This document shows, one piece after another, positions 34,514 to 58,317 of a stretch of DNA of 64,000 bases. The stretch is from the NCBI RefSeq assembly GCF_036321535.1, contig NC_087447.1, positions 558,001 to 622,000 of the forward strand. The letters are read 5' to 3'. The first letter of the stretch is position 1. Each line of letters starts with the position of its first letter. The notes beneath the pieces were generated by a model. The model saw only the letters and a list, made by a program, of their open reading frames with translations. It had not been told where the DNA came from and did not search any database. The position numbers and the translations under genes are program-made. Source of the DNA: Camelus dromedarius (taxonomy: Eukaryota).

Positions 34514-36647
<2,134 letters not shown>

Positions 36648-46820: not shown

Positions 46821-46955
46821 GGCTGGTGCAAAATGAAAGTCAGAGCCCCTTGGTCAAAAATTGTGGAGAATTTCAAGACAGTGGCTGCAGAGCATCAAAA
46901 CCAGAGCATCAAACTGTGTGACTGCACATGTCATGCGCCAGTGAAGCCAGCCATG
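46821..46955 (-). mobile_element. MER45A-like (hAT-Tip100) DNA transposon
   Basis: GTGCAAAATGAAA...GCCCCTTGGTCAAAAATT...AGAATTTCAAGACAG...GCAGAGCAT...GACTGCACA...TGAAGCCAGCC resembles the reverse complement of the MER45A consensus. Confidence 0.75.
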
Positions 46956-47399
46956 CTCCCTTGGCTGGGTGAAGCAGGGTGCCGCCAGGGTTGAGCGCTG
47001 GGTGGGCTTGGGGTGGGCCGCCAGCTTTGCATGGGGTCTGTCTCCCAGGCTGACCCCTGTCCCGTGTGAGCTGCCCGAGTTTCCGGGTCCTGGCGCAGCC
47101 CTTGTCCAGCACAGGGTGGGCTGCTCGGAGAGTGTGCACCCGCTGTGTGTTCCGGCTGTAGTCCCCGAGCTCCCTCAATCTGGGCCAGAGGTCTGGGCCG
47201 GAGCTGCCCCAAGTCGCCACCAGACGGCAACTGGGTCACCCCTCATTTGCATAGTGCTTTGCATTTTGCGTGGGTCAGAGGTCTCCGAGCCCAGCTTGGG
47301 GGCAAGGACGGGGACGTCGTGCCCGGGGCTGAGCGCTGCCTGGGCCCCCTGCCCTCAGCCCCCAGCCCCTTCCATCGCTTCCCGGGCTGGGCGGGCAGG

Positions 47400-47720
47400 A
47401 GAAGTGGAAGACCAAGGGGCGCCGGCGCGGGCGGAGGGCCGGGGGCGGGGGCGCCGTCCCGGGGCTGCGATTGGCCCGCGCGGGGCGGCGCGGTCGGATT
47501 TGCGAGGCGGCGCGGCGAGGAGTGGCGGGGGGGGGGGTCTTCGCGGAGGCGGGGCCGGCGCGGATTGGCCGGCGGGCGGGCACGGGGCGGGGCGGGCCCG
47601 GCCCGGGCTGCCGCGGGCGGGCAGGTGTCCGGGGACCGTCGCGGGTCCGAGAGGGGCGGCGCGCCCGGTGCCACCGCGGCCCGGGGCGCGGAGCCTGGGG
47701 CGGCCCCGGCGGCCCCGCGC
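47400..47720 (+). promoter_or_regulatory. TSPAN4: Internal CpG-island promoter of TSPAN4
   Basis: Two inverted CCAAT boxes (ATTGG at 47470-47474 and 47564-47568) with several GC boxes, directly upstream of the first coding exon. Confidence 0.7.
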
Positions 47721-47940
47721 GATGCGCCGCTCAAGCACAGACGAGTCCACGTACCGGCGCAGCCCGTCGCCGCCGGGCAAGGAACCTGGCTTCGCGCGCG
47801 GCGGCGCCTTCTTCGGCCTGCACGCCAATCCCGGTCCCAAGGCGGCCCAGGCGCGCTACACGTCGCCCAAGGGTAACAAGTACGTAGTCTTCTATCTGGA
47901 CCTCTCCTTCATCTTCCTCCTAGAGCTGAAGCGCTGCAGC

Positions 47941-50900
47941 ATGGCGCGCGGCTGCCTCCAGGGCGTCAAGTACCTCATGTTCGCCTTCAACCTGCTCTTC
48001 TGGGTGAGTGGCCACGGGATGTCGGGGATCCGGGGTCGCCGCTTCGGCAGGGGTACGTGGGGGACACCCGGGACGTGGACTGGGAGGCGTGCCTGGGGGT
48101 CGTCGCTCCCTCTGCAGGCCAGGGCTGGATCGGCCCCTGGGGAGGGGTTCCGGTACCTCTGGGGTCCGCCCCGGCCTCTGCACTCTGGGCGGCCGCCCCG
48201 CATCCTCTCCCTGCTCCGTCTCTTCCTGAGACCAGGCGCGTCCCGCACCTGCCGCAGGATCGCCTCAGGCCCCGTGCCTGGCCTCTGCCGGGTTTAAGTC
48301 CCTGTCAGTGCGCGGGGCCGCGGGTGCCTTCCCTCCGTCCCCTTCCCTCCCTCTTCGTGGCTGCAGCGCTTGTCTCTTCTTCCCTCCCCTCCTCAGCAGA
48401 CTGGCCTACCGGGCTCCAGGGACCACACTTAGGGAGGGGCTGAGGAGGGGAGTTGGTTCCGCGACTCCTGAAGCGCGGTGGGGCGGGAGAGGAGGGTGTG
48501 TGGGTGATTGCTCTGGTTGGGCCCGAGCCTGAGCAGGATGGTGGGCCAGCAGGAGAGGGGTCTGGCCTCTGCTGCTCATCCAACATGAGGGGGGGGGGCA
48601 TCCATAACTTTTGCAGAGTTGGGTTGGGTTTGCTCAGATGAGGTGCCTGTGTTCAGGGTCAGAGGTGTTGGTGCTGCAGGGTTGTCCCCTCCCTGCAAGA
48701 TTGAGAACAGAGGGTCCACCCAGTCCCTTAAGGGCAGGGAGGGTGCTGGACTGGGGCTGGGGCAGGTGTCACACCTGGCTCCACTGGTCGCGCTGGGAGA
48801 AGGTTGATGGAGACATGATGCCAAGGTCACACTCCCTGCTCAGTTGTTAATTCCTGATCGGACCCTCCTTCCACAACTGGGAGTAAGGGGGTGTGGCTTT
48901 AGCTCCTGCCTGGGCTCTGGGCCCCAGAAGAAGGCTGTCATTTGTAAGCTCATTTGCATGAGGTCCAGTTAAGGCCAAATGCTCAGAAAGCCCGTCTGCC
49001 TTTCTGCACCTCCCTTCTATCCTGGGGTGCTGGCTTTCCTCTCCCCAGTTTGTTAAGGGGGGATGTCCCTGAGAGGGGTGGCCAGCCTGGGAGGTTCCTG
49101 CCCTGATGCCCGTCTCCAGAAGGGGTCACCCGCAGGTTTTCTTCTCTGCAGGGGGCTCCTGGGAGGGGCAGGCCCCAGGCCAGAGTGGAGGGGTACACGG
49201 GAGGCCAAGAGCCAGCAGCAGAGGCGGTGTGCAGCTGGAACTCTGCCCAGGCATGAGAAGAGGGGACTGTCTTCTCTTGGTGGGGGACGTTGACCAAATG
49301 TAGGGGCACCAGTGTGGTTAGCACTGAGCGGCTGGCAGGGTCAGCATGCCCTTGGCAGTGTGACAGGAGAAGGCTGCAGGTGACAGTGTGACCAGAGCTG
49401 GCAGCCATGGGTGTGAGGGAGGTGAGCCATGTTTGTGGCAGAGTGACAGGGGAATGGGCTGAGGGTGTGGGGGATGGTCCTACGTGGTGGCAGCACCTGC
49501 TTCTCCCCTTCCCTGCCCTCCTCAGTGACCTCTGCTTGCATGGAGGAGAAGGGGTCCCTCAACGTGGCCTGTGCTCTGAGAGCAGCCCACCCCAATGGGC
49601 TCTTTGCCCTGTGCACCTGCAGGAGCCCCCTGCCAGCTGCAGGGTGGACACACTCCACTGATCCCCATCGTGGATGCCGTCCTCAACCCAGGAAAGAAAA
49701 GTCAGGAAGCCCTCTGGGACTCTCCCCTGAGAAGAAAATCCAATTCCCTTTTATTATCCAATTACATTTCCCAGCCAAGCCAACCGGGCCCCTGTACCAG
49801 CCTTGGCCCCTCCACGCCCCAGCTTTGTGTCAGAGGAGTGCAGAGGCCTGGCAGTCAGAGAGTGGACCCATGGGAGATGTGCTGAGGCCAGGGGTGGGGA
49901 GAATGGCTGCAGGCTGGGTGCGACACTCACCCTGCTTTGTCCCTGTGCAGGTGCCAGCTGAGCCCTTCCTGCTGGGGACCAAGGCTGCAGGCGACAGGGT
50001 GGCGGCTAGAACATGCCTTCCCAGGGACGCTGGCTCCTTTGCTGCCTGGGGGCACTGGGCCCCCACAGGAGTGGTAGTTTTTGCCCCCAACTCCATTTCT
50101 CCCCGAGAGTGTCCTGCCTCAGCCTCCCCACTGGGTTTTTTAAGTAACAGCGTTACTGAAATTTATGTGATATTTATTCACATACCACACAATTAACCCA
50201 TTTGAAATGTGCAGTTCAATGCTATTCACAGAGTTGTGCAACCATCACCAAAATAAATTTTAGGACATTTGATTCGAGCCATGAAAGGTTCACCATGGGC
50301 TCCGAGGTGGTGGTGGGGGAGCCAGTGGGCTGGAGACCCTCTCCCCCTCACCTGTGTCAGTCCTGACTCCACTCTCCAGGGATGGGCCGGCTCTGGCCAT
50401 AATTGACTCCTCGTGCTCTGTTGGACAGGTCTCCCTGGGGGCTCCTGGCTGGAGTCCTGAGGGCAGAGCTGAGGCCTCCAGCCTTGGGTCCCAGTGGGGC
50501 CGGGAAATGTCAGTACCCATCTGTCCCAGGGTTGCTCTGCCCGTTCCTGTGTGGCCGGTGGGTCATGGACCCATCTCAGGGGAGGAACCAGGCCTGCTTG
50601 TTGTCACCAGTGCTTGGAGCTGGGGTGCCCTGAGAAGGGGAGCCAGGAAGGCGTAGGCGGGCGGCAGGGTCACTGGGGGAGGAGAGGCCCAGAGGGGCCG
50701 GTGCTGGGGTCTTTCCGAGCTCAGAGTGGCCAACTCCCAGACCTGCACCTGCCCTCCCGCAGCGGACGGGCCCTCACAGGCAAGGGGCACCCCCCCTGGG
50801 GGTGCAGCCTCCCTTCTCTGAGGTATGCACAGGGGGTCAGCAGCTTACGGCCAGAGTCCCTGGGGCAGGGTGTCTCCTGGGAGCACCATCCTGGTGATTA

Positions 50901-53900: not shown

Positions 53901-56900
53901 CAGGCACACGTGCCCCCCACGCCCCTCACGGACCTGCAGGCCCCTACCCTGCTTTGCCCTGGGGAGGGGCTCAGACGGGCAGGATGAACAGGCCAGGGCA
54001 GGAGCCTCTGTGGGGGGCCTGGCGCAGCCTCAGCCAGCAGCAGCCAGAACAGGTGTGGCTTATAATTTTTAGACAGAAGCTCTTCTGTTTTGTGGACAGC
54101 GCAAAGAGGGATAGGGTGGGTGATGGAGAGAAGCTGAGCTAACTGGCCCCCCATGGGGTAGGTGTGGGCATTCTAGCCTGGAGCTCTCCTGTCCACCTCA
54201 GCCAGCCCTGGGCAAGGCCGAGAGGGACATCGGCCACCAGCAGCAGACCTGGGCCAGAGCCCCTGGTACCTGCCCACACCCCTGGGATCCTGGGGCTGCT
54301 CCTGCTCTTGGGCTGGGAGCTGTACCGCCCCCACCCCATAATTGCAGTCTTCTGCCAGCCTGGCTTAATGCATGTGTGCTCCCCAGGGGCTTAGTGAGAG
54401 TGGAGCAGCGGCCCCCACCCCTACCCCTGCAGCCAGGGCTGAACTGCTGGTGGGGGCAGGGCGAGTGAGTACACGTGCCGAGGGAGAAGGCCTCCTTAGG
54501 CAGGGGTTTCAGGGCCCATCAGGCCTGCCTAAGTCATGGGGTATCTACCAGGGTCCAGGCCAGCCTCAAGGAGGCTTCTGGGCCCCGGGGGTGCAGGGCC
54601 CCATGTCCTGTCCAGTCCCAGAGTGGTGTGGAGCCCCCAGGGCTGCCTGGCCTTCCCCGAGCCCGTCAGCCATCCGCCTCCAGCTGGTCTCTCGAAGCCT
54701 GGGTTGCCTCAGGACCCAGAACCGGCTAGCATTTGTAGGGGGCTGCCTGCCCCTAGCCTGTGCCCTGGACACCTTCTCCCGTTTTATCTTGGGATGGCTC
54801 AGAGGCCTCAGAGTCCTGGGGGGCCAGAGCCGCAGCCCCTCAGCTGCCCTGGCTCCACCCTGCTCCCCACCGCTAGGAGGTGGGCATGCCTTCCTCACGG
54901 AAGGCCGAGAGCTCACCTTGGATTCATCACTGCTTGGCCTTCTCCCCTTCCTCATTTTAATTGATTTTTGTAGTAACAAGCAATTATGGAGCTCAATAAA
55001 AGCTGCAGTGGTGGAGGAGAGGTGGTGGCAAGGGCACGTGGGGGCTGCACTTCAGAAGGGATGGTTAGGGGAGGGCATGTGGGGGCCCAGCTGGGGTGAC
55101 GGGACAAGATGGGGAGTTCGGTGGGGCCGCCCGGGACCTGGCGGGACGCTCACCTGCTACTCTGCCGTCCCTCTCTCCCTGCCTGGGTCCCAGCTGGGAG
55201 GCTGCGGCATCCTGGGCGTTGGCATCTGGCTGGCCGCCACGCAGGGGAACTTCGCCACCCTGTCCTCCTCCTTCCCGTCCCTGTCGGCCGCCAACCTGCT
55301 CATTGTCACCGGCACCTTTGTGATGGCCATTGGCTTTGTGGGCTGCATCGGGGCCATCAAGGAGAACAGATGCCTCCTGCTCACTGTGAGTCGGGGGGGG
55401 GTGCTGGGGCCGGGCCGGGCGGGGCCCCCCTTCACGGGACACAGACACACGGGTGCCCGCACACCCACACGCATGCCAGGCAGAGCCCCTTCAGCCGGTA
55501 CCGGGCCCATGCTCTCTGACACCACCTCTCCCATGAACCCTCCCGGCTCCTGCCCCTGCCCTCTTGGCTCCCCAGGACCCTCTGTTCAGAGCTCCCAGCC
55601 CCCGCCTCGGCTTCAGAGGTGGATTTACAGGCAGGATGTTTCCATCCTGTGGAACATAAATCACAGGAGAAGGAGAAGGACCCCTGGGCCAGGCTACGCC
55701 TATTAGTATGCCTGGCAGCGGCCACCGGCGGCTGACTCAAGCCTGAAATCACCTGCTTCATCTGGGGCCTCTGTCTGAGGAGCCCTTGCTGGGGAGGGGC
55801 CTCCCAGAGGGTGCGTCCCCTGTCTGTGCAGCTACCCAACGTGTCCAGTATATGCCCCAGATGTTCCCTTCAGGGCGGTGGGTAGGGGTGGAGCTGAGGC
55901 CCCCAACCCTGACCTTTCCCACGGGGTGACTTGGAGGTCAGAGGTCAGAGGCTAGTGCTCCACTGTTCAGCCCGGTCAGGGCACCTGGGCTGAGGTCAAG
56001 GCTGTGACTTGAGGTACCACCACCCAGTGGGCCACCTGTGCGGTCACAGGTGGGGGCTTCTCTAACTTGTTCCTGCCTGAGTGGGCAGTGGCCACCCCTG
56101 GCTGTCCTGAGGGATGGGACCTGGGGGTTGGGGGTACTGCAGTCAGACCCACTCCCTGCAGGGGCCCCCCTGGGCATCGCTGCACCTGCCCGCCGAGCAC
56201 AAGGACACGGGTCTGGAGCACACGTGTGTGCTCGAAGACGTGAGGCTGTGCTCAGAGGTCGGGCAAGACCCGACAGCCCCTGGCACAGAGACTGGAGGGC
56301 TCCGAGGGAGGTGGGGCAGCACGAGTGGGGCCTGCAGACCTGGCTTGGGGGCTCGGGCTGAGGCTCGCGCCCCACCCTCTGGGGGCAGCTGGGGGCTGGG
56401 TTGCTGAGGCCGCTGGGTCCTCGCCCGCAGTTCTTCGTGCTGCTGCTGCTGGTGTTCCTGCTGGAGGCCACCGTCGCCATCCTCTTCTTCGCCTACACTG
56501 ACAAGGTGCGGCTCCCCCACTTCGGGTGGGGGGGCTCCATCCTCATCACCATGAGGGCCATGGTGCACAGGCGACGAGGGGGCAGGGGCCCTAGCACGGC
56601 GAGGACCAACAATGGGACCCGGGACCCGGCCGTGCATCTGATTTTAACCACAACCACTGGAGGCCGGGCCTGGAGGGAAACGCTGGGGCCCTGGAGGGCA
56701 AAGCAGTGTGAGCTCCCAGGTGGCCCCCAGGCTGGGCCCCCTGCTCCTGCTGACTTCAGCTGTGTATTAGTCGGATGAGGAAAATCTCCTATCCCCCATG
56801 GATTTATTTCATTATTTACACCAGTGAGGGCTCATTTACATTATTCTGAGTTATATACTCCAGGACTGTTATTTTTTGCTCGTCTGTCTTAGCTTTGGTG

Positions 56901-58317
56901 GCTAGGAGCTCTCACTTGCTCCTGTGAGGAGATGCACCTCCTTCAGTGCACCTCCTCTCTGGGGAGTCCCTGCCCCAGCCCTGGACTTGGCCATTTCTCC
57001 AAGGAGCCTGGTTCCTTTCCTGGAGGATGGTCTTAGGAATGAGGACCTCGGCCCTCTTGGCCGACAGCAAGATGTGCGGGTCCTGACAGGTGTGGGCAGA
57101 CGCAGCTGAGGGTTTCTGTACTGTCTCCCTCTGAACATAACTGACGGACGTCGTGCTGATGTCTGACTCGAACCCCGGGCTCAGCACCACGTGTGGCCCA
57201 GGGAGACCAAGGGGCAAAGGCCTGAGCCTGCTGAGGGCTTCTGGGAGGGGGTGACTCCAGGAAGGGGGACAGAAGGCACGGGGTGGGGGCCTGGGCAGAG
57301 GTGGGGTCTGGACGAGGTAGGTGGAGCTGGCTGCAGGGTGGCCCTGCTGTCCTGCAGATCGACAGGTACGCGCAGCGGGACCTGAAGAGGGGCCTGCACC
57401 TGTACGGAACCCCGGGCAACGTGGGCCTCACCAACGCCTGGAGCATCATCCAGACAGACGTGAGTCGGGGCGTGGCAGCGCCGGGCGTGGGCGGGGCCAG
57501 GGCGTGGCCAGGGCACAGTCCCAGCCCGCACTTCCTCCGCAGTTCCGCTGCTGCGGGGTCTCCAACTACACCGACTGGTTCGAGGTCTACAACGCCACGC
57601 GCGTGCCCGACTCCTGCTGTCTGGAGTTCAGCGAGAGCTGCGGGCTGCACGCGCCCGGCACCTGGTGGAAAGCGGTGAGGCTGTGCCCTTCCCCCGGCTC
57701 TGGCCCCGGGGACTTGAGGGTGGAGCGCCGGCCTCGCAGCCCCCGGTGACGCCTGCTCTTCCTCCAGCCCTGTTACGAGACGGTGAAGATGTGGCTTCAG
57801 GAGAACCTGCTGGCCGTGGGCGTCTTCGGACTGTGCACAGCTCTGGTGCAGGTAGGGGGTGGGGCTGCCACCGGAACCGCCGGACCCACCCCAGCCCCCG
57901 CCTTCTTCCCCATGGCAAGTCCTGAATGCGGCAGCATCAGGGCAACGCATCTCCGGGATGCAGACGGGGGTTGCAGCCAGAGCGGGCGGACAGCACCAAA
58001 GGTGCTGATTGCAGTTGGATTAACGGTCAGAGGGCAGCTGCTGGGGCCAGGCCTGGCACCCGTGGGTCCTGACACCACCCGTGGAGGCCAGGGTGGGTGG
58101 CCAAACCTGAGGGGAAAGGGTCTGGACTGAGCCCTAGGGTTACAGGCCATCCAGGCAGTGGGGTGGGGTCAGGGTGCCTACTGGGGCAGGACCTCTCTGG
58201 GCTGTCATCCCTGGAGCAGCCCTGCCCAGCTGCCACCTGTCCCCACAGATCCTGGGGCTGACCTTCGCCATGACCATGTACTGCCAGGTGGTGAAGGCGG
58301 ACACCTACCGTGCGTAG
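47941..58317 (+). CDS. TSPAN4: Tetraspanin-4, 238 aa (canonical form)
   Basis: join(47941..48003,55194..55385,56431..56505,57358..57459,57543..57674,57768..57851,58249..58317); MARGCLQGVKYLMFAFNLLFW..., FRCCGVSNYT, PDSCC, ...ADTYRA; exon acceptor TAG at 47921-47923; AATAAA at 58741-58746. Confidence 0.97.
50136..50273 (-). mobile_element. L1MB-type 3' end fragment in TSPAN4 intron
   Basis: TTCACATACCACACAATTAACCCATTTGAAATGTGCAGTTCAAT...TATTCACAGAGTTGTGCAACCATCACCA...AATTTTAGGACATTT is a typical reverse L1MB 3' end. Confidence 0.85.
56800..57060 (-). mobile_element. L1MC/L1MD-type fragment in TSPAN4 intron
   Basis: TTATTTTTTGCTC...AGCTTTGGTGGCTAGGAGCTCTC and CCAGCCCTGG...GCCATTTCTCCAAGGAGCCTGGTTCCTTT...GGAGGATGGT match the reverse L1MC 3' region. 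Confidence 0.7.

What the first reader, a model, noticed from the sequence alone, without database searches (positions are those of the whole stretch)
47722..48003. Hidden 73-aa N-terminal extension of TSPAN4 from an internal promoter, reading through the canonical splice acceptor
Seen: downstream of a CCAAT/GC-box promoter, the first ATG (47722, G at -3) is in frame with the canonical ATG (47941) with no stop, giving MRRSSTDESTYRRSPSPPGKEPGFARGGAFFGLHANPGPKAAQARYTSPKGNKYVVFYLDLSFIFLLELKRCS-MARGC. Unlike neighbouring GC-driven ORFs, this peptide has normal complexity. It has Arg/Ser/Pro kinase-type motifs (RRSS, RRSPSP, TSPK) and a hydrophobic segment (YVVFYLDLSFIFLL) encoded by the branch point and polypyrimidine tract of the upstream intron, so that DNA would serve as both splice signal and codons. 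The internal GT at 47873 would leave only a 51-nt intron, so transcripts starting here should retain the segment. Inference: a 311-aa TSPAN4 isoform with a long phospho-regulatable cytoplasmic tail and a possible extra membrane-embedded segment. Typical tetraspanins have short tails, and TSPAN4 drives migrasome formation (established), so the isoform could alter curvature sensing or sorting.
Basis: partly seen in the sequence, partly recalled or inferred. Interest (0 to 1): 0.8.

Follow-up and report, generated by a model that had tools for sequence, protein, structure and literature searches.

The report
Conserved long N-terminus of TSPAN4
The 73 codons upstream of the usual TSPAN4 start are a real protein-coding extension, kept by selection in TSPAN4 and its sister gene TSPAN9 across jawed vertebrates; gene-prediction pipelines already model it, but no searched paper describes it.

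Summary
ATG 47722 is in frame with the canonical ATG 47941, with 73 stop-free codons that run through the canonical acceptor (AG 47922-47923).

The open frame alone is weak evidence. It stays open for 450 codons in this GC-rich DNA.

Comparison with other species is decisive:
- The same extension is found in TSPAN4 of mammals, birds, reptiles, frogs, ray-finned and cartilaginous fishes, and also in TSPAN9.
- The start Met and frame are kept, and indels are in frame.
- Substitutions fall mainly on third codon positions (dN/dS 0.06-0.12 among most placentals).
- Conservation begins exactly at the ATG.
- The segment KYVVFYLDLSF(I/V)FLLE is almost invariant. Its codons also form the polypyrimidine tract and acceptor of the upstream intron, and the Leu codon CTA is fixed by the acceptor.

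A CpG island with conserved inverted CCAAT boxes lies upstream, but no transcription start or translation was shown here.

It is not truly hidden. RefSeq and Ensembl already predict such isoforms in many species, and a camel model has an identical N-terminus. I found no paper describing it, and a 2019 survey names only TSPAN10 as having a long N-terminus.

Function (phospho-regulated tail, membrane-associated segment) remains inference.

The parts
47300..47721 (+). CpG island with GC boxes; putative TATA-less internal promoter and 5' UTR of the long isoform
   Evidence: GC 0.82, CpG o/e 1.01, ten GGGCGG, no TATA, no ATG. Apart from the CCAAT boxes it aligns poorly with other placentals (42-54% identity over the 120 nt before the ATG). 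The transcription start was not determined.
47470..47474 (-). Inverted CCAAT box (ATTGG), distal
   Evidence: Lies at -252 from the ATG. Paired ATTGG boxes occur at -160 to -262 in two other placental TSPAN4 loci, and single ATTGG boxes in the rodent contig and in mammalian TSPAN9.
47564..47568 (-). Inverted CCAAT box (ATTGG), proximal
   Evidence: Lies at -158 from the ATG. Counterparts at -177 (L006), -175 (L001) and -166 (TSPAN9, L011).
47722..47724 (+). Start codon of the long isoform
   Evidence: First ATG after 47031. Purine at -3 here and in all 9 lineages examined, with GCCACC in bird. The Met is invariant in 38- and 67-sequence alignments. Nucleotide conservation begins here.
47722..47781 (+). 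Conserved Ser/Arg-rich N-terminal motif MRRSSTDESTYRRSPSPPGK
   Evidence: M1 and S4 are invariant across both alignments of TSPAN4, TSPAN9 and frog TSPAN4-like. S14 and S16 are invariant across TSPAN4 and TSPAN9 (A2); S14 stays invariant and S16 nearly so (>=90%) when frog TSPAN4-like is added (A3). R13 is invariant in A2 and nearly so in A3. Arg codons switch CGC/CGG/AGA/AGG and Ser TCN/AGY between lineages. AF2 predicts disorder.
47800..47811 (+). Site of a lineage-specific in-frame deletion (FRRYSSxYG motif plus Gly-rich linker lost)
   Evidence: The window, camel, whales, ruminants and porpoise lack 18-22 codons that other placentals, birds, frogs and sharks have. The frame is preserved. 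The exact breakpoint is ambiguous because GGCGGC(C/G)CCTTC flanks both sides.
47782..47877 (+). Variable linker with conserved islands (FFGLH.NPGPK, Y.SPKG)
   Evidence: Length varies only by in-frame indels across vertebrates.
47878..47925 (+). Nearly invariant hydrophobic segment KYVVFYLDLSFIFLLE
   Evidence: 271 of 319 retrieved proteins carry it with almost no change. It is the most conserved stretch of the whole protein. Changes are synonymous. Kyte-Doolittle mean is 1.87, the same as TM1, with helical moment 0.10. AF2 predicts a helix at low confidence.
47871..47921 (+). Branch-point region and polypyrimidine tract of the upstream intron, overlapping codons 51-67
   Evidence: Read from the sequence. 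Pyrimidine-to-pyrimidine changes: 2 at codon positions 1-2 (19 sites) against 26 at position 3 (10 sites). Amino-acid constraint therefore exceeds splice-signal constraint.
47922..47923 (+). Canonical 3' splice acceptor AG, inside codons Leu67 (CTA) and Glu68 (GAG)
   Evidence: CTA followed by G is invariant in all 9 DNA sequences, including TSPAN9. Models that use other upstream exons join here, giving ...(G|AG)E-LKRCS (P0057, P0058, P0060, P0064-67, P0069).
47941..48003 (+). Canonical TSPAN4 start codon and first 21 codons (MARGCLQGVKYLMFAFNLLFW), then donor GT at 48004
   Evidence: Strong Kozak context (A at -3, G at +4). The Pfam tetraspanin domain begins about 9 residues after this Met.
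55194..55385 (+). TSPAN4 coding exon 2
   Evidence: tblastn 95-100% identity, flanked by cag| and |gtga.
56431..56505 (+). TSPAN4 coding exon 3 (TM3; skipped in some predicted isoforms)
57358..57459 (+). TSPAN4 coding exon 4
57543..57674 (+). TSPAN4 coding exon 5 (CCG motif)
57768..57851 (+). TSPAN4 coding exon 6
58249..58317 (+). TSPAN4 last coding exon including the stop
   Evidence: The joined model gives 311 aa and is 94% identical to the deer isoform model.

Best explanation
Positions 47722-47940 are genuine coding sequence: an alternative, longer N-terminus of TSPAN4.

How it is made. Transcripts that contain this DNA continuous with the first coding exon, and so do not use the acceptor at 47922-47923, are translated from ATG 47722 into a 311-aa protein. 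Such transcripts most likely start in the CpG-island, CCAAT/GC-box promoter just upstream. Transcripts from the distal promoter splice into the acceptor and give the ordinary 238-aa protein. Promoter choice would therefore switch a 73-residue module on or off, and the same nucleotides serve as intron 3' end in one transcript and as codons in the other.

What the module contains:
- a disordered, Ser/Arg-rich cytoplasmic tail with conserved basophilic and acidophilic kinase-type sites (RRSS-TDES, RSPS);
- a variable linker;
- a nearly invariant 16-residue hydrophobic segment (YVVFYLDLSFIFLLEL), then Lys-Arg-Cys, about 13 residues before TM1.

The hydrophobic segment most likely lies in or on the cytosolic leaflet next to the tetraspanin bundle.

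Age. The module predates the TSPAN4/TSPAN9 split, so it is at least as old as jawed vertebrates.

Shown here: coding-type purifying selection, its taxonomic range, the dual use of the splice signals, and the gene model.

Inferred: the internal transcription start, cytoplasmic location, phosphorylation, membrane association, and any effect on tetraspanin domains or migrasomes.
For: 1. An exhaustive phmmer search with the 94-aa exon translation found 70 proteins, 55 below 1e-10. Many begin at the same Met and cover the whole query at 50-99% identity.
2. Named models with the extension span primates, rodents, pangolin, carnivores, whales, ruminants, camel, koala, birds, lizards, turtles, frogs, sturgeon/paddlefish, bichir, gar, teleosts, sharks and rays for TSPAN4. 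The range for TSPAN9 is similar, including elephant shark.
3. In the codon alignment of 9 DNA sequences, 25 ungapped extension columns have an invariant amino acid across 8 sequences, and 22 of these vary in codon. Arg switches between CGN and AGR.
4. dN/dS for the extension: window vs placental B 0.12, vs rodent 0.06, placental B vs rodent 0.115, vs bird 0.075. These values match those of the adjoining canonical codons.
5. Differences by codon position in three independent pairs are 31/26/81 (P = 9e-10). Window vs rodent is 4/2/23 (P = 5e-7).
6. Identity to other placentals is 42-54% in the 120 nt before the ATG, 85-93% in the first 28 codons, 89-97% in the last 22 extension codons, and 37-49% in the following intron.
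7. In lower-GC lineages (bird, teleost, frog paralogue) frame 0 has no stops while the other frames have 2-5. P(no stop) is 0.01-0.03 for each.
8. All length differences are in frame.
9. Purine at -3 in all lineages examined.
10. In the polypyrimidine part, pyrimidine-to-pyrimidine changes are about 25-fold rarer per site at codon positions 1-2 than at position 3.
11. Promoter: a CpG island, with inverted CCAAT boxes at similar distances in four mammalian TSPAN4 loci and in mammalian TSPAN9.
12. RNA: a rodent RNA-derived contig joins the extension to exons 2-3. A skate TSPAN9-like mRNA contig carries a complete 330-aa extended ORF, with an in-frame stop 4 codons before the ATG.
13. The window's gene model gives 311 aa.
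Against: - There is no direct evidence in this species, or in any mammal here, for a transcription start upstream of 47722, for ribosome initiation, or for peptides.
- The rodent contig also retains a downstream intron and reaches past the CCAAT box. It could be partly processed pre-mRNA from the distal promoter.
- Orthologues were found through databases of predicted ORFs and gene models, so lineages where the frame is broken would be under-sampled.
- One mammalian lineage (L001) shows dN/dS 0.57 against the window.
- Armadillo is divergent, and a 65-aa fragment (P0053) has two replacements in the invariant segment.
- The window's own clade has lost the second conserved motif (FRRYSSxYG) by deletion.
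- AF2 confidence for the hydrophobic helix is low (pLDDT about 45-61). The segment has only 16 residues and includes Asp and Glu, so membrane insertion is not established.
- Curated human RefSeq entries listed in 2019 encode only the 238-aa form or a truncated form (PMC6773723).
Confidence: 0.8

Rival explanations
1. Chance open frame. The ATG and the stop-free run are by-products of GC-rich CpG-island and intron DNA and are never meaningfully translated.
For: The frame is open for 450 codons, through the CpG island and into the next intron. All six frames have long ORFs here. Shuffles stay stop-free about 20% of the time.
Against: Codon-periodic substitution, dN/dS of 0.06-0.12, conserved Met and frame, in-frame indels only, open frame in lineages with 49-53% GC, and conservation that begins at the ATG. 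Found in the paralogue TSPAN9.
Confidence: 0.02
2. Non-coding conservation. The region is conserved because it holds the branch point, polypyrimidine tract, acceptor and promoter-proximal or 5' UTR elements, and the amino-acid conservation is a side effect.
For: The last 17 or so codons overlap the polypyrimidine tract and acceptor, and the CTA-G at the acceptor is invariant. Pyrimidine-rich DNA read in any frame gives Phe/Leu/Ser-rich peptides.
Against: Third positions vary freely, including changes to purines, while positions 1-2 do not. Pyrimidine-to-pyrimidine changes that a splice signal would tolerate are about 25-fold depleted per site at positions 1-2. The N-terminal 20 codons, far from any splice signal, show the same pattern, with CGN/AGR Arg switches.
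Confidence: 0.03
3. Coding in other vertebrates but a decaying relic in this lineage. Cetartiodactyls lost one conserved motif, and the long isoform may no longer be expressed or needed here.
For: An in-frame deletion of the FRRYSSxYG motif and linker is shared by camel, whales, ruminants and porpoise. There is no expression evidence for this species.
Against: The remaining 73 codons are 98-100% identical in protein among the camel, whale and ruminant models. dN/dS against other placentals is 0.06-0.12. ATG, frame and hydrophobic segment are intact. Whale and camel annotations model it.
Confidence: 0.07
4. The extension is translated, but its main role is to control the amount of protein. For example, it could act as a degron or sorting/retention signal, or be removed after synthesis, rather than adding a stable functional domain to the mature tetraspanin.
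For: The tail is predicted disordered. YLDL and YVVF fit the YxxPhi sorting pattern, and the tail is rich in phospho-acceptor sites (read from the sequence, inference).
Against: Nothing tested here separates this from the main reading. Near-invariance of a 16-residue hydrophobic block over more than 400 million years suggests a structural or interaction role, though that is also compatible with a signal.
Confidence: 0.08

Closest known systems
Automatically predicted long TSPAN4 isoforms in RefSeq, GenBank and UniProt-TrEMBL. Examples: Camelus bactrianus isoform X6 (A0A9W3HIP8), Microtus oregoni isoform X1, Nomascus leucogenys isoform X1, Gallus gallus isoform X2, Danio rerio tspan4a isoform X1, Lepisosteus W5LV52
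   Same: They carry the same extension. The camel model's first 94 residues are identical to the window's.
   Different: They are computational models with no described function. The curated human and mouse entries surveyed in 2019 lack the extension. No searched paper mentions it.
Predicted long TSPAN9 isoforms (mouse XP_017176801, macaque, bats, Callorhinchus A0A4W3JLW3, many teleosts where it is the only model)
   Same: Homologous extension: MEKSSSE(D/E)SxIHRSPS(V/L)DS(R/K)DS ... KYVVFYLDLSFVFLLEFKKCN, then MARGCLCC. The position relative to the acceptor is the same.
   Different: Paralogous gene with a different linker. The S-P of YTSPKG is replaced (Y[SN]APKG).
[quoted passage not shown]
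   Same: A tetraspanin with a long cytoplasmic N-terminus (PMC6773723).
   Different: No sequence relation was found, and TSPAN10's N-terminus is constitutive. A feature-based atlas search listed TSPAN10 only as a weak lead (score 0.42).
PRPH2 (peripherin-2/RDS) C-terminal amphipathic helix that partitions into the cytosolic leaflet and drives curvature
   Same: A tetraspanin-family protein with an extra membrane-active cytosolic helix (as summarised in PMC6773723). This is a functional analogy for the hydrophobic segment.
   Different: It sits at the C-terminus and is amphipathic. The TSPAN4/9 segment is N-terminal and uniformly hydrophobic (helical moment 0.10). Membrane activity was not tested.
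N-terminal proteoforms generated by alternative promoters or first exons (general class; review PMC13082882)
   Same: Promoter choice decides whether an upstream in-frame AUG is present.
   Different: Here the extra codons double as the 3' splice signals of the alternative transcript, and the arrangement is conserved in two paralogues.

Membership tests
Tetraspanin (Pfam PF00335), TSPAN4 orthologue | Tetraspanin domain with four TM helices and a CCG motif in the large loop | tested here: met
   The extended orthologue P0088 hits PF00335 at 8e-57, residues 104-324. The window's exons encode FRCCGVS and all helices. The joined model is 311 aa and 94% identical to the deer model.
Conserved protein-coding N-terminal extension | In-frame upstream AUG with no intervening stop | tested here: met
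   Weak on its own in GC-rich DNA.
Conserved protein-coding N-terminal extension | Purifying selection on the reading frame (synonymous bias, dN/dS well below 1, in-frame indels) | tested here: met
   dN/dS 0.06-0.12 among most placentals and 0.075 vs bird. Position-3 bias P = 9e-10. Indels are all multiples of 3.
Conserved protein-coding N-terminal extension | Conservation boundary at the start codon, with the start codon itself conserved in a usable context | tested here: met
   Identity rises from 42-54% to 85-93% at the ATG. Met is invariant in 67 sequences. Purine at -3 in all lineages examined.
Conserved protein-coding N-terminal extension | Mature transcripts that contain the upstream AUG | tested here: inconclusive
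   The skate TSPAN9-like mRNA contig is complete and spliced. The rodent TSPAN4 contig is spliced downstream but retains an intron. Nothing is available for the window's species.
Conserved protein-coding N-terminal extension | Ribosome initiation or peptide evidence | not testable with these tools
   No Ribo-seq or MS data were available. Peptide strings were not found in the searched paper texts.
CpG-island, NF-Y/Sp1-type TATA-less promoter | CpG island with CCAAT and GC boxes conserved in position | tested here: met
   GC 0.82, o/e 1.01, 10 GC boxes, ATTGG at -252 and -158. Counterparts are present in L006, L001, L002 and L011.
CpG-island, NF-Y/Sp1-type TATA-less promoter | Mapped transcription start sites | not testable with these tools
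   No CAGE or 5'-end data. The bacterial-type promoter scan is irrelevant.
Transmembrane helix (a fifth TM) | About 19 or more consecutive apolar residues with favourable insertion energy | tested here: not met
   Only 16 residues, including Asp and Glu. A crude sum on the Hessa scale is +3.4, against +0.5 for TM1. This does not exclude a half-membrane or interfacial segment.
Amphipathic in-plane helix | High helical hydrophobic moment | tested here: not met
   Moment 0.10 at 100 degrees, as low as TM1. AF2 gives a helix at low confidence only.

The most novel reading that the evidence does not exclude
The nearly invariant block KYVVFYLDLSF(I/V)FLLE-x-(K/R)-x-C is an ancient membrane-inserting module, either a cytosolic-leaflet wedge or half-helix, or a short fifth membrane segment. 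Together with a phospho-regulated tail, it changes how TSPAN4 and TSPAN9 pack, sort or bend membranes. Because its codons are also the 3' splice signals of the distal-promoter transcript, promoter choice works as a hard-wired on/off switch for the module. That switch would have been kept in two paralogues since before jawed vertebrates diverged. All functional work on TSPAN4 and TSPAN9, migrasomes included, would then have used only the 'off' form.
Probability: 0.3. Interest if true: 0.8.

Novelty: new variant of a known kind. Interest (0 to 1): 0.6.

Why it matters
TSPAN4 is the standard marker and driver of migrasomes, and TSPAN9 is studied in platelets and cancer. As far as the searched literature shows, experiments and curated human annotation use the 238- and 239-aa forms. 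A 2019 survey states that only TSPAN10 has a large N-terminus (PMC6773723).

A 73-95-residue extension has been under purifying selection in both genes across jawed vertebrates, and its hydrophobic block is more conserved than any transmembrane helix. That points to an unstudied regulatory or structural layer.

It is also a clean example of DNA under two constraints at once: branch point, polypyrimidine tract and acceptor in one transcript, and codons in another. The rare Leu codon CTA is frozen by the acceptor.

The idea can be tested directly by expressing long and short forms and by searching existing proteomes and CAGE data.

Tried and rejected
- Open reading frame as evidence. Rejected as uninformative here: the frame is open for 450 codons and shuffle P is about 0.2.
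- Bacterial-type promoter/terminator scan. Irrelevant to a vertebrate CpG island and found nothing.
- Pfam scan of the extension. No family.
- ESM-atlas feature search on residues 1-96. Only weak tetraspanin leads with scores of 0.49 or below.
- Logan contigs P0099/L001 and P0306, taken at first for mRNAs with long ORFs. They proved to be genomic read-through ORFs (FW|VSGG...) and were used only as orthologous DNA.
- P0004 (whale model), P0030 (mouse TSPAN9 model) and P0015 (stingray). No DNA obtainable.
- The 303- vs 327-aa and 301- vs 326-aa isoform pairs, suspected at first of lacking the hydrophobic segment. They differ by skipping the TM3 exon instead.
- The 'deep' sequence L008, suspected of being a jawless-fish or invertebrate version. 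It is an anuran TSPAN4-like paralogue, so no evidence older than jawed vertebrates was obtained.
- Absence of out-of-frame ATGs between the two starts (a leaky-scanning design). True in the window and two other placentals but not in rodent, bird or fish, so it is not a conserved feature.
- Literature searches for TSPAN4/TSPAN9 long isoforms, PhyloCSF mentions, tspan4a isoforms and the peptide strings. Nothing relevant.
- Two AF2 runs gave only low-confidence helices for the hydrophobic block. Fold searches were not run, because they would only return tetraspanins.
Full report
**What is in the window.** The ATG at 47722 (gcgATGc, G at -3) is in frame with the canonical TSPAN4 start at 47941. 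The exon ends at 48003, followed by GTGAGT. The canonical acceptor of the upstream intron is the AG at 47922-47923, within ...ttcatcttcctcctAG|AGCTGAAG. It therefore lies inside codons Leu67 (CTA) and Glu68 (GAG) of the proposed extension. The GT at 47873 would indeed leave only 51 nt. No other ATG occurs in any frame between 47032 and 47940. Positions 47300-47800 form a strong CpG island (GC 0.82, CpG o/e 1.01) with ten GGGCGG boxes, two inverted CCAAT boxes (ATTGG at 47470 and 47564) and no TATA. The exons are 55194-55385, 56431-56505, 57358-57459, 57543-57674, 57768-57851 and 58249-58317.

**How much of this is chance.** The stop-free run is not evidence. The same frame is open from 46942 to 48295 (450 codons), through the CpG island and on into the next intron. 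All six frames carry long ORFs here. Shuffles of the 219 nt remain stop-free about 20% of the time. The one internal hint of coding is composition by codon position: GC 0.58/0.53/0.86, close to 0.52/0.33/1.0 in the adjoining true coding codons.

**Comparative evidence: proteins.** An exhaustive phmmer search of 1.84 billion representative proteins with the 94-aa exon translation returned 70 hits, 55 below 1e-10. Many start at their own Met1 and cover query residues 1-94 at 50-99% identity. Look-ups and two word-indexed searches gave names.
- TSPAN4 'isoform X' models with the extension exist for gibbon, squirrel monkey, voles, pangolin, sea lion, cats, whales, porpoise, cattle relatives, deer, camel, koala, chicken and many other birds, lizards, turtles, frogs, sturgeon/paddlefish, bichir, gar, zebrafish, salmonids and other teleosts, and skates, rays and sharks.
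- A homologous extension precedes the TSPAN9 start (MARGCLCC...). It reads MEKSSSE(D/E)SxIHRSPS(V/L)DS(R/K)DS ... KYVVFYLDLSFVFLLEFKKCN. It occurs in mouse, macaque, bats, tree shrew, tenrec, birds, lizards, frogs, elephant shark, sharks and many teleosts, in some of which it is the only model.
- A third, anuran-only TSPAN4-like gene has a more divergent version.
- In alignments of 38 and 67 full-length extended proteins, the invariant or nearly invariant extension residues are M1, S4, R13, S14, S16 and the block K-Y-V-V-F-Y-L-D-L-S-F-x-F-L-L-E...C. This block is the most conserved stretch of the whole protein.
- 271 of 319 retrieved sequences carry this block almost unchanged.
- The Bactrian camel model (isoform X6, A0A9W3HIP8) has first 94 residues identical to the window's, and other exon peptides also match. 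The window is therefore probably camelid.

**Comparative evidence: codons.** I fetched orthologous DNA for three other placentals, a bird, two teleosts, the frog paralogue and a mammalian TSPAN9 and built a codon alignment.
- Amino acids are held while codons drift. Of 25 ungapped extension columns with an invariant residue across eight sequences, 22 vary in codon.
- Arg alternates between CGC/CGG/CGT and AGA/AGG, and Ser between TCN and AGY.
- Nei-Gojobori dN/dS for the extension is 0.12 (window vs placental B), 0.06 (vs rodent), 0.115 (placental B vs rodent) and 0.075 (vs bird). These values are as low as for the adjoining canonical codons.
- Differences by codon position in three phylogenetically independent pairs sum to 31/26/81 (binomial P = 9e-10). 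Window vs rodent is 4/2/23 (P = 5e-7).
- All length differences are multiples of three.
- In lineages where this DNA is only 49-53% GC, frame 0 has no stops while the other frames have 2-5. P(no stop) is 0.01-0.03 each.
- Conservation starts at the ATG. Identity to other placentals is 42-54% over the preceding 120 nt, 85-93% over the first 28 codons, 89-97% over the last 22 extension codons, and 37-49% in the intron after the exon.
- Every lineage examined has a purine at -3 of the upstream ATG, and the bird has GCCACCATG.

**Splice signal and codons in the same DNA.** Codons 51-68 overlap the branch region, polypyrimidine tract and acceptor.
- The Leu67 codon is CTA in all nine sequences, TSPAN9 included, and is followed by G. 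That is the acceptor cTAG|.
- Gene models that use other upstream exons all join at this point (...E-LKRCS).
- A pure splice-signal constraint would tolerate pyrimidine-to-pyrimidine changes at any codon position. Observed are 2 such changes at positions 1-2 (19 pyrimidine sites) against 26 at position 3 (10 sites).
- The peptide is therefore constrained beyond what the splice signal needs.

**Transcription.** This remains the weakest link.
- Indirect support comes from the CpG island. Two other placental TSPAN4 loci carry paired inverted CCAAT boxes at -160 to -262 from the ATG, and the rodent contig and mammalian TSPAN9 each carry one. NF-Y-type boxes usually sit 60-100 nt upstream of start sites (established knowledge). 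That would place starts roughly at 47540-47660.
- A rodent RNA-derived Logan contig joins 230 nt of upstream sequence, the extension and exons 2-3 without using the acceptor. It also retains a later intron and reaches beyond the CCAAT box, so it may be partly processed pre-mRNA.
- A skate TSPAN9-like contig is a complete spliced mRNA with a 330-aa extended ORF and an in-frame stop four codons before the ATG.
- Whale submitter models and many Gnomon models start at this ATG.
- None of this maps a start site in the window's species.

**Anatomy and likely mechanism.**
- AF2, run with family alignments, predicts residues 1 to about 80 as disordered. The hydrophobic block is predicted as a helix (83-92 in vole TSPAN4-L, 71-88 in bat TSPAN9-L) separated by 2-3 residues from a long TM1 helix. 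pLDDT there is only about 45-61.
- Pfam assigns nothing to the extension, and PF00335 begins about 9 residues after the canonical Met.
- The 16-mer YVVFYLDLSFIFLLEL is as hydrophobic as TM1 (Kyte-Doolittle 1.87 vs 1.88) and is not amphipathic (moment 0.10). It is short and contains Asp and Glu, with a crude insertion sum of +3.4. It fits neither a classical TM helix nor an in-plane amphipathic helix. A cytosolic-leaflet or bundle-associated segment next to a conserved Cys is my best guess.
- The tail carries conserved RRSS-TDES and RSPS sites, and in most vertebrates FRRYSSxYG as well. These are plausible kinase targets (inference).
- YLDL and YVVF also fit the YxxPhi sorting pattern (inference).

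**Lineage notes.**
- The window, camel, whales, porpoise and ruminants share an in-frame loss of FRRYSSxYG plus a Gly-rich linker, flanked by a GGCGGC(C/G)CCTTC repeat. What remains is 98-100% identical in protein among them.
- One unidentified mammal (L001) shows dN/dS 0.57 against the window.
- Armadillo is divergent.

**Known or new.** The isoform is not hidden from databases, because automatic pipelines predict it widely. I found no paper that describes it. A 2019 survey of curated human tetraspanin mRNAs lists only the 238-aa TSPAN4 (plus a truncated form) and the 239-aa TSPAN9. [quoted passage not shown] I class this as a new variant of a known kind: an alternative-promoter N-terminal proteoform on a tetraspanin.

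**Caveats.**
- Orthologues were found through predicted ORFs and models, so broken lineages are under-sampled.
- Pairwise counts summed over all sequences are not independent. The independent-pair test is the one to rely on.
- Transcription start, translation, topology and function were not tested.

**Verdict.** The coding interpretation is strongly supported, the promoter is plausible, and function is open. The search of earlier scan findings returned nothing on this feature.

Noticed in passing
window 47800-47811: In-frame deletion of about 18-22 codons (FRRYSSxYG motif plus Gly-rich linker) relative to other placentals, birds, frogs and sharks. It is shared with the camel, whale, porpoise and ruminant models. 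It is flanked by a GGCGGC(C/G)CCTTC direct repeat, which suggests slippage.
   Followed up: partly
P0056, P0063 (cobras), P0068 (emu TSPAN9), P0285 (Xenopus tropicalis TSPAN9): These gene models splice from a donor inside the extension to the canonical acceptor, in frame. That removes the linker and the hydrophobic block (...GAA|K-LKRCS; ...GAFY|EFKKC). If real, it is a second long isoform without the hydrophobic segment. The window has no comparable donor.
   Followed up: partly
L008/L009 1313-1906; P0313-P0316: Anurans have a third gene ('tetraspanin-4-like', 317 aa) with a divergent extension (MQTSSSDDPSY...RVIVLYLDLSFLLLLELKKMS). It keeps YLDLSF and LLLE and the CTA-G acceptor codon.
   Followed up: partly
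L001 628-1260: An unidentified, very GC-rich mammalian TSPAN4 locus has many amino-acid changes in the extension (dN/dS 0.57 vs the window; GC3 0.99) but keeps the frame and the hydrophobic block. Possible causes are relaxed constraint or GC-biased gene conversion.
   Followed up: no
L006, L001, L002, L011 (43-88 nt before the extension ATG): Each of four other mammalian loci (three TSPAN4, one TSPAN9) has one out-of-frame ATG at -43 to -88, always in the same relative frame. The window has none. This could be a small uORF, or it could lie upstream of the real start site.
   Followed up: no
P0053 (65 aa, 430-nt NCBI contig): A fragment with a primate/rodent-type MARACLQAV start has two replacements in the otherwise invariant block (SIIFLRE instead of SFIFLLE). 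It may be a lineage with a degraded extension or a poor assembly. The organism is unknown.
   Followed up: no
window 56431-56505: The 75-nt TM3 exon is skipped in many predicted isoforms (chicken X2 303 aa, salmon X2 301 aa, camel X6). That would give three-TM products, as described for other tetraspanins in PMC6773723.
   Followed up: partly
window 36095-36271 (+): Weak tblastn match to the tetraspanin large loop (32-36% identity). This is probably the neighbouring CD151 gene. Together with the PIDD1 note at about 9256, it fits synteny with human 11p15.5.
   Followed up: no
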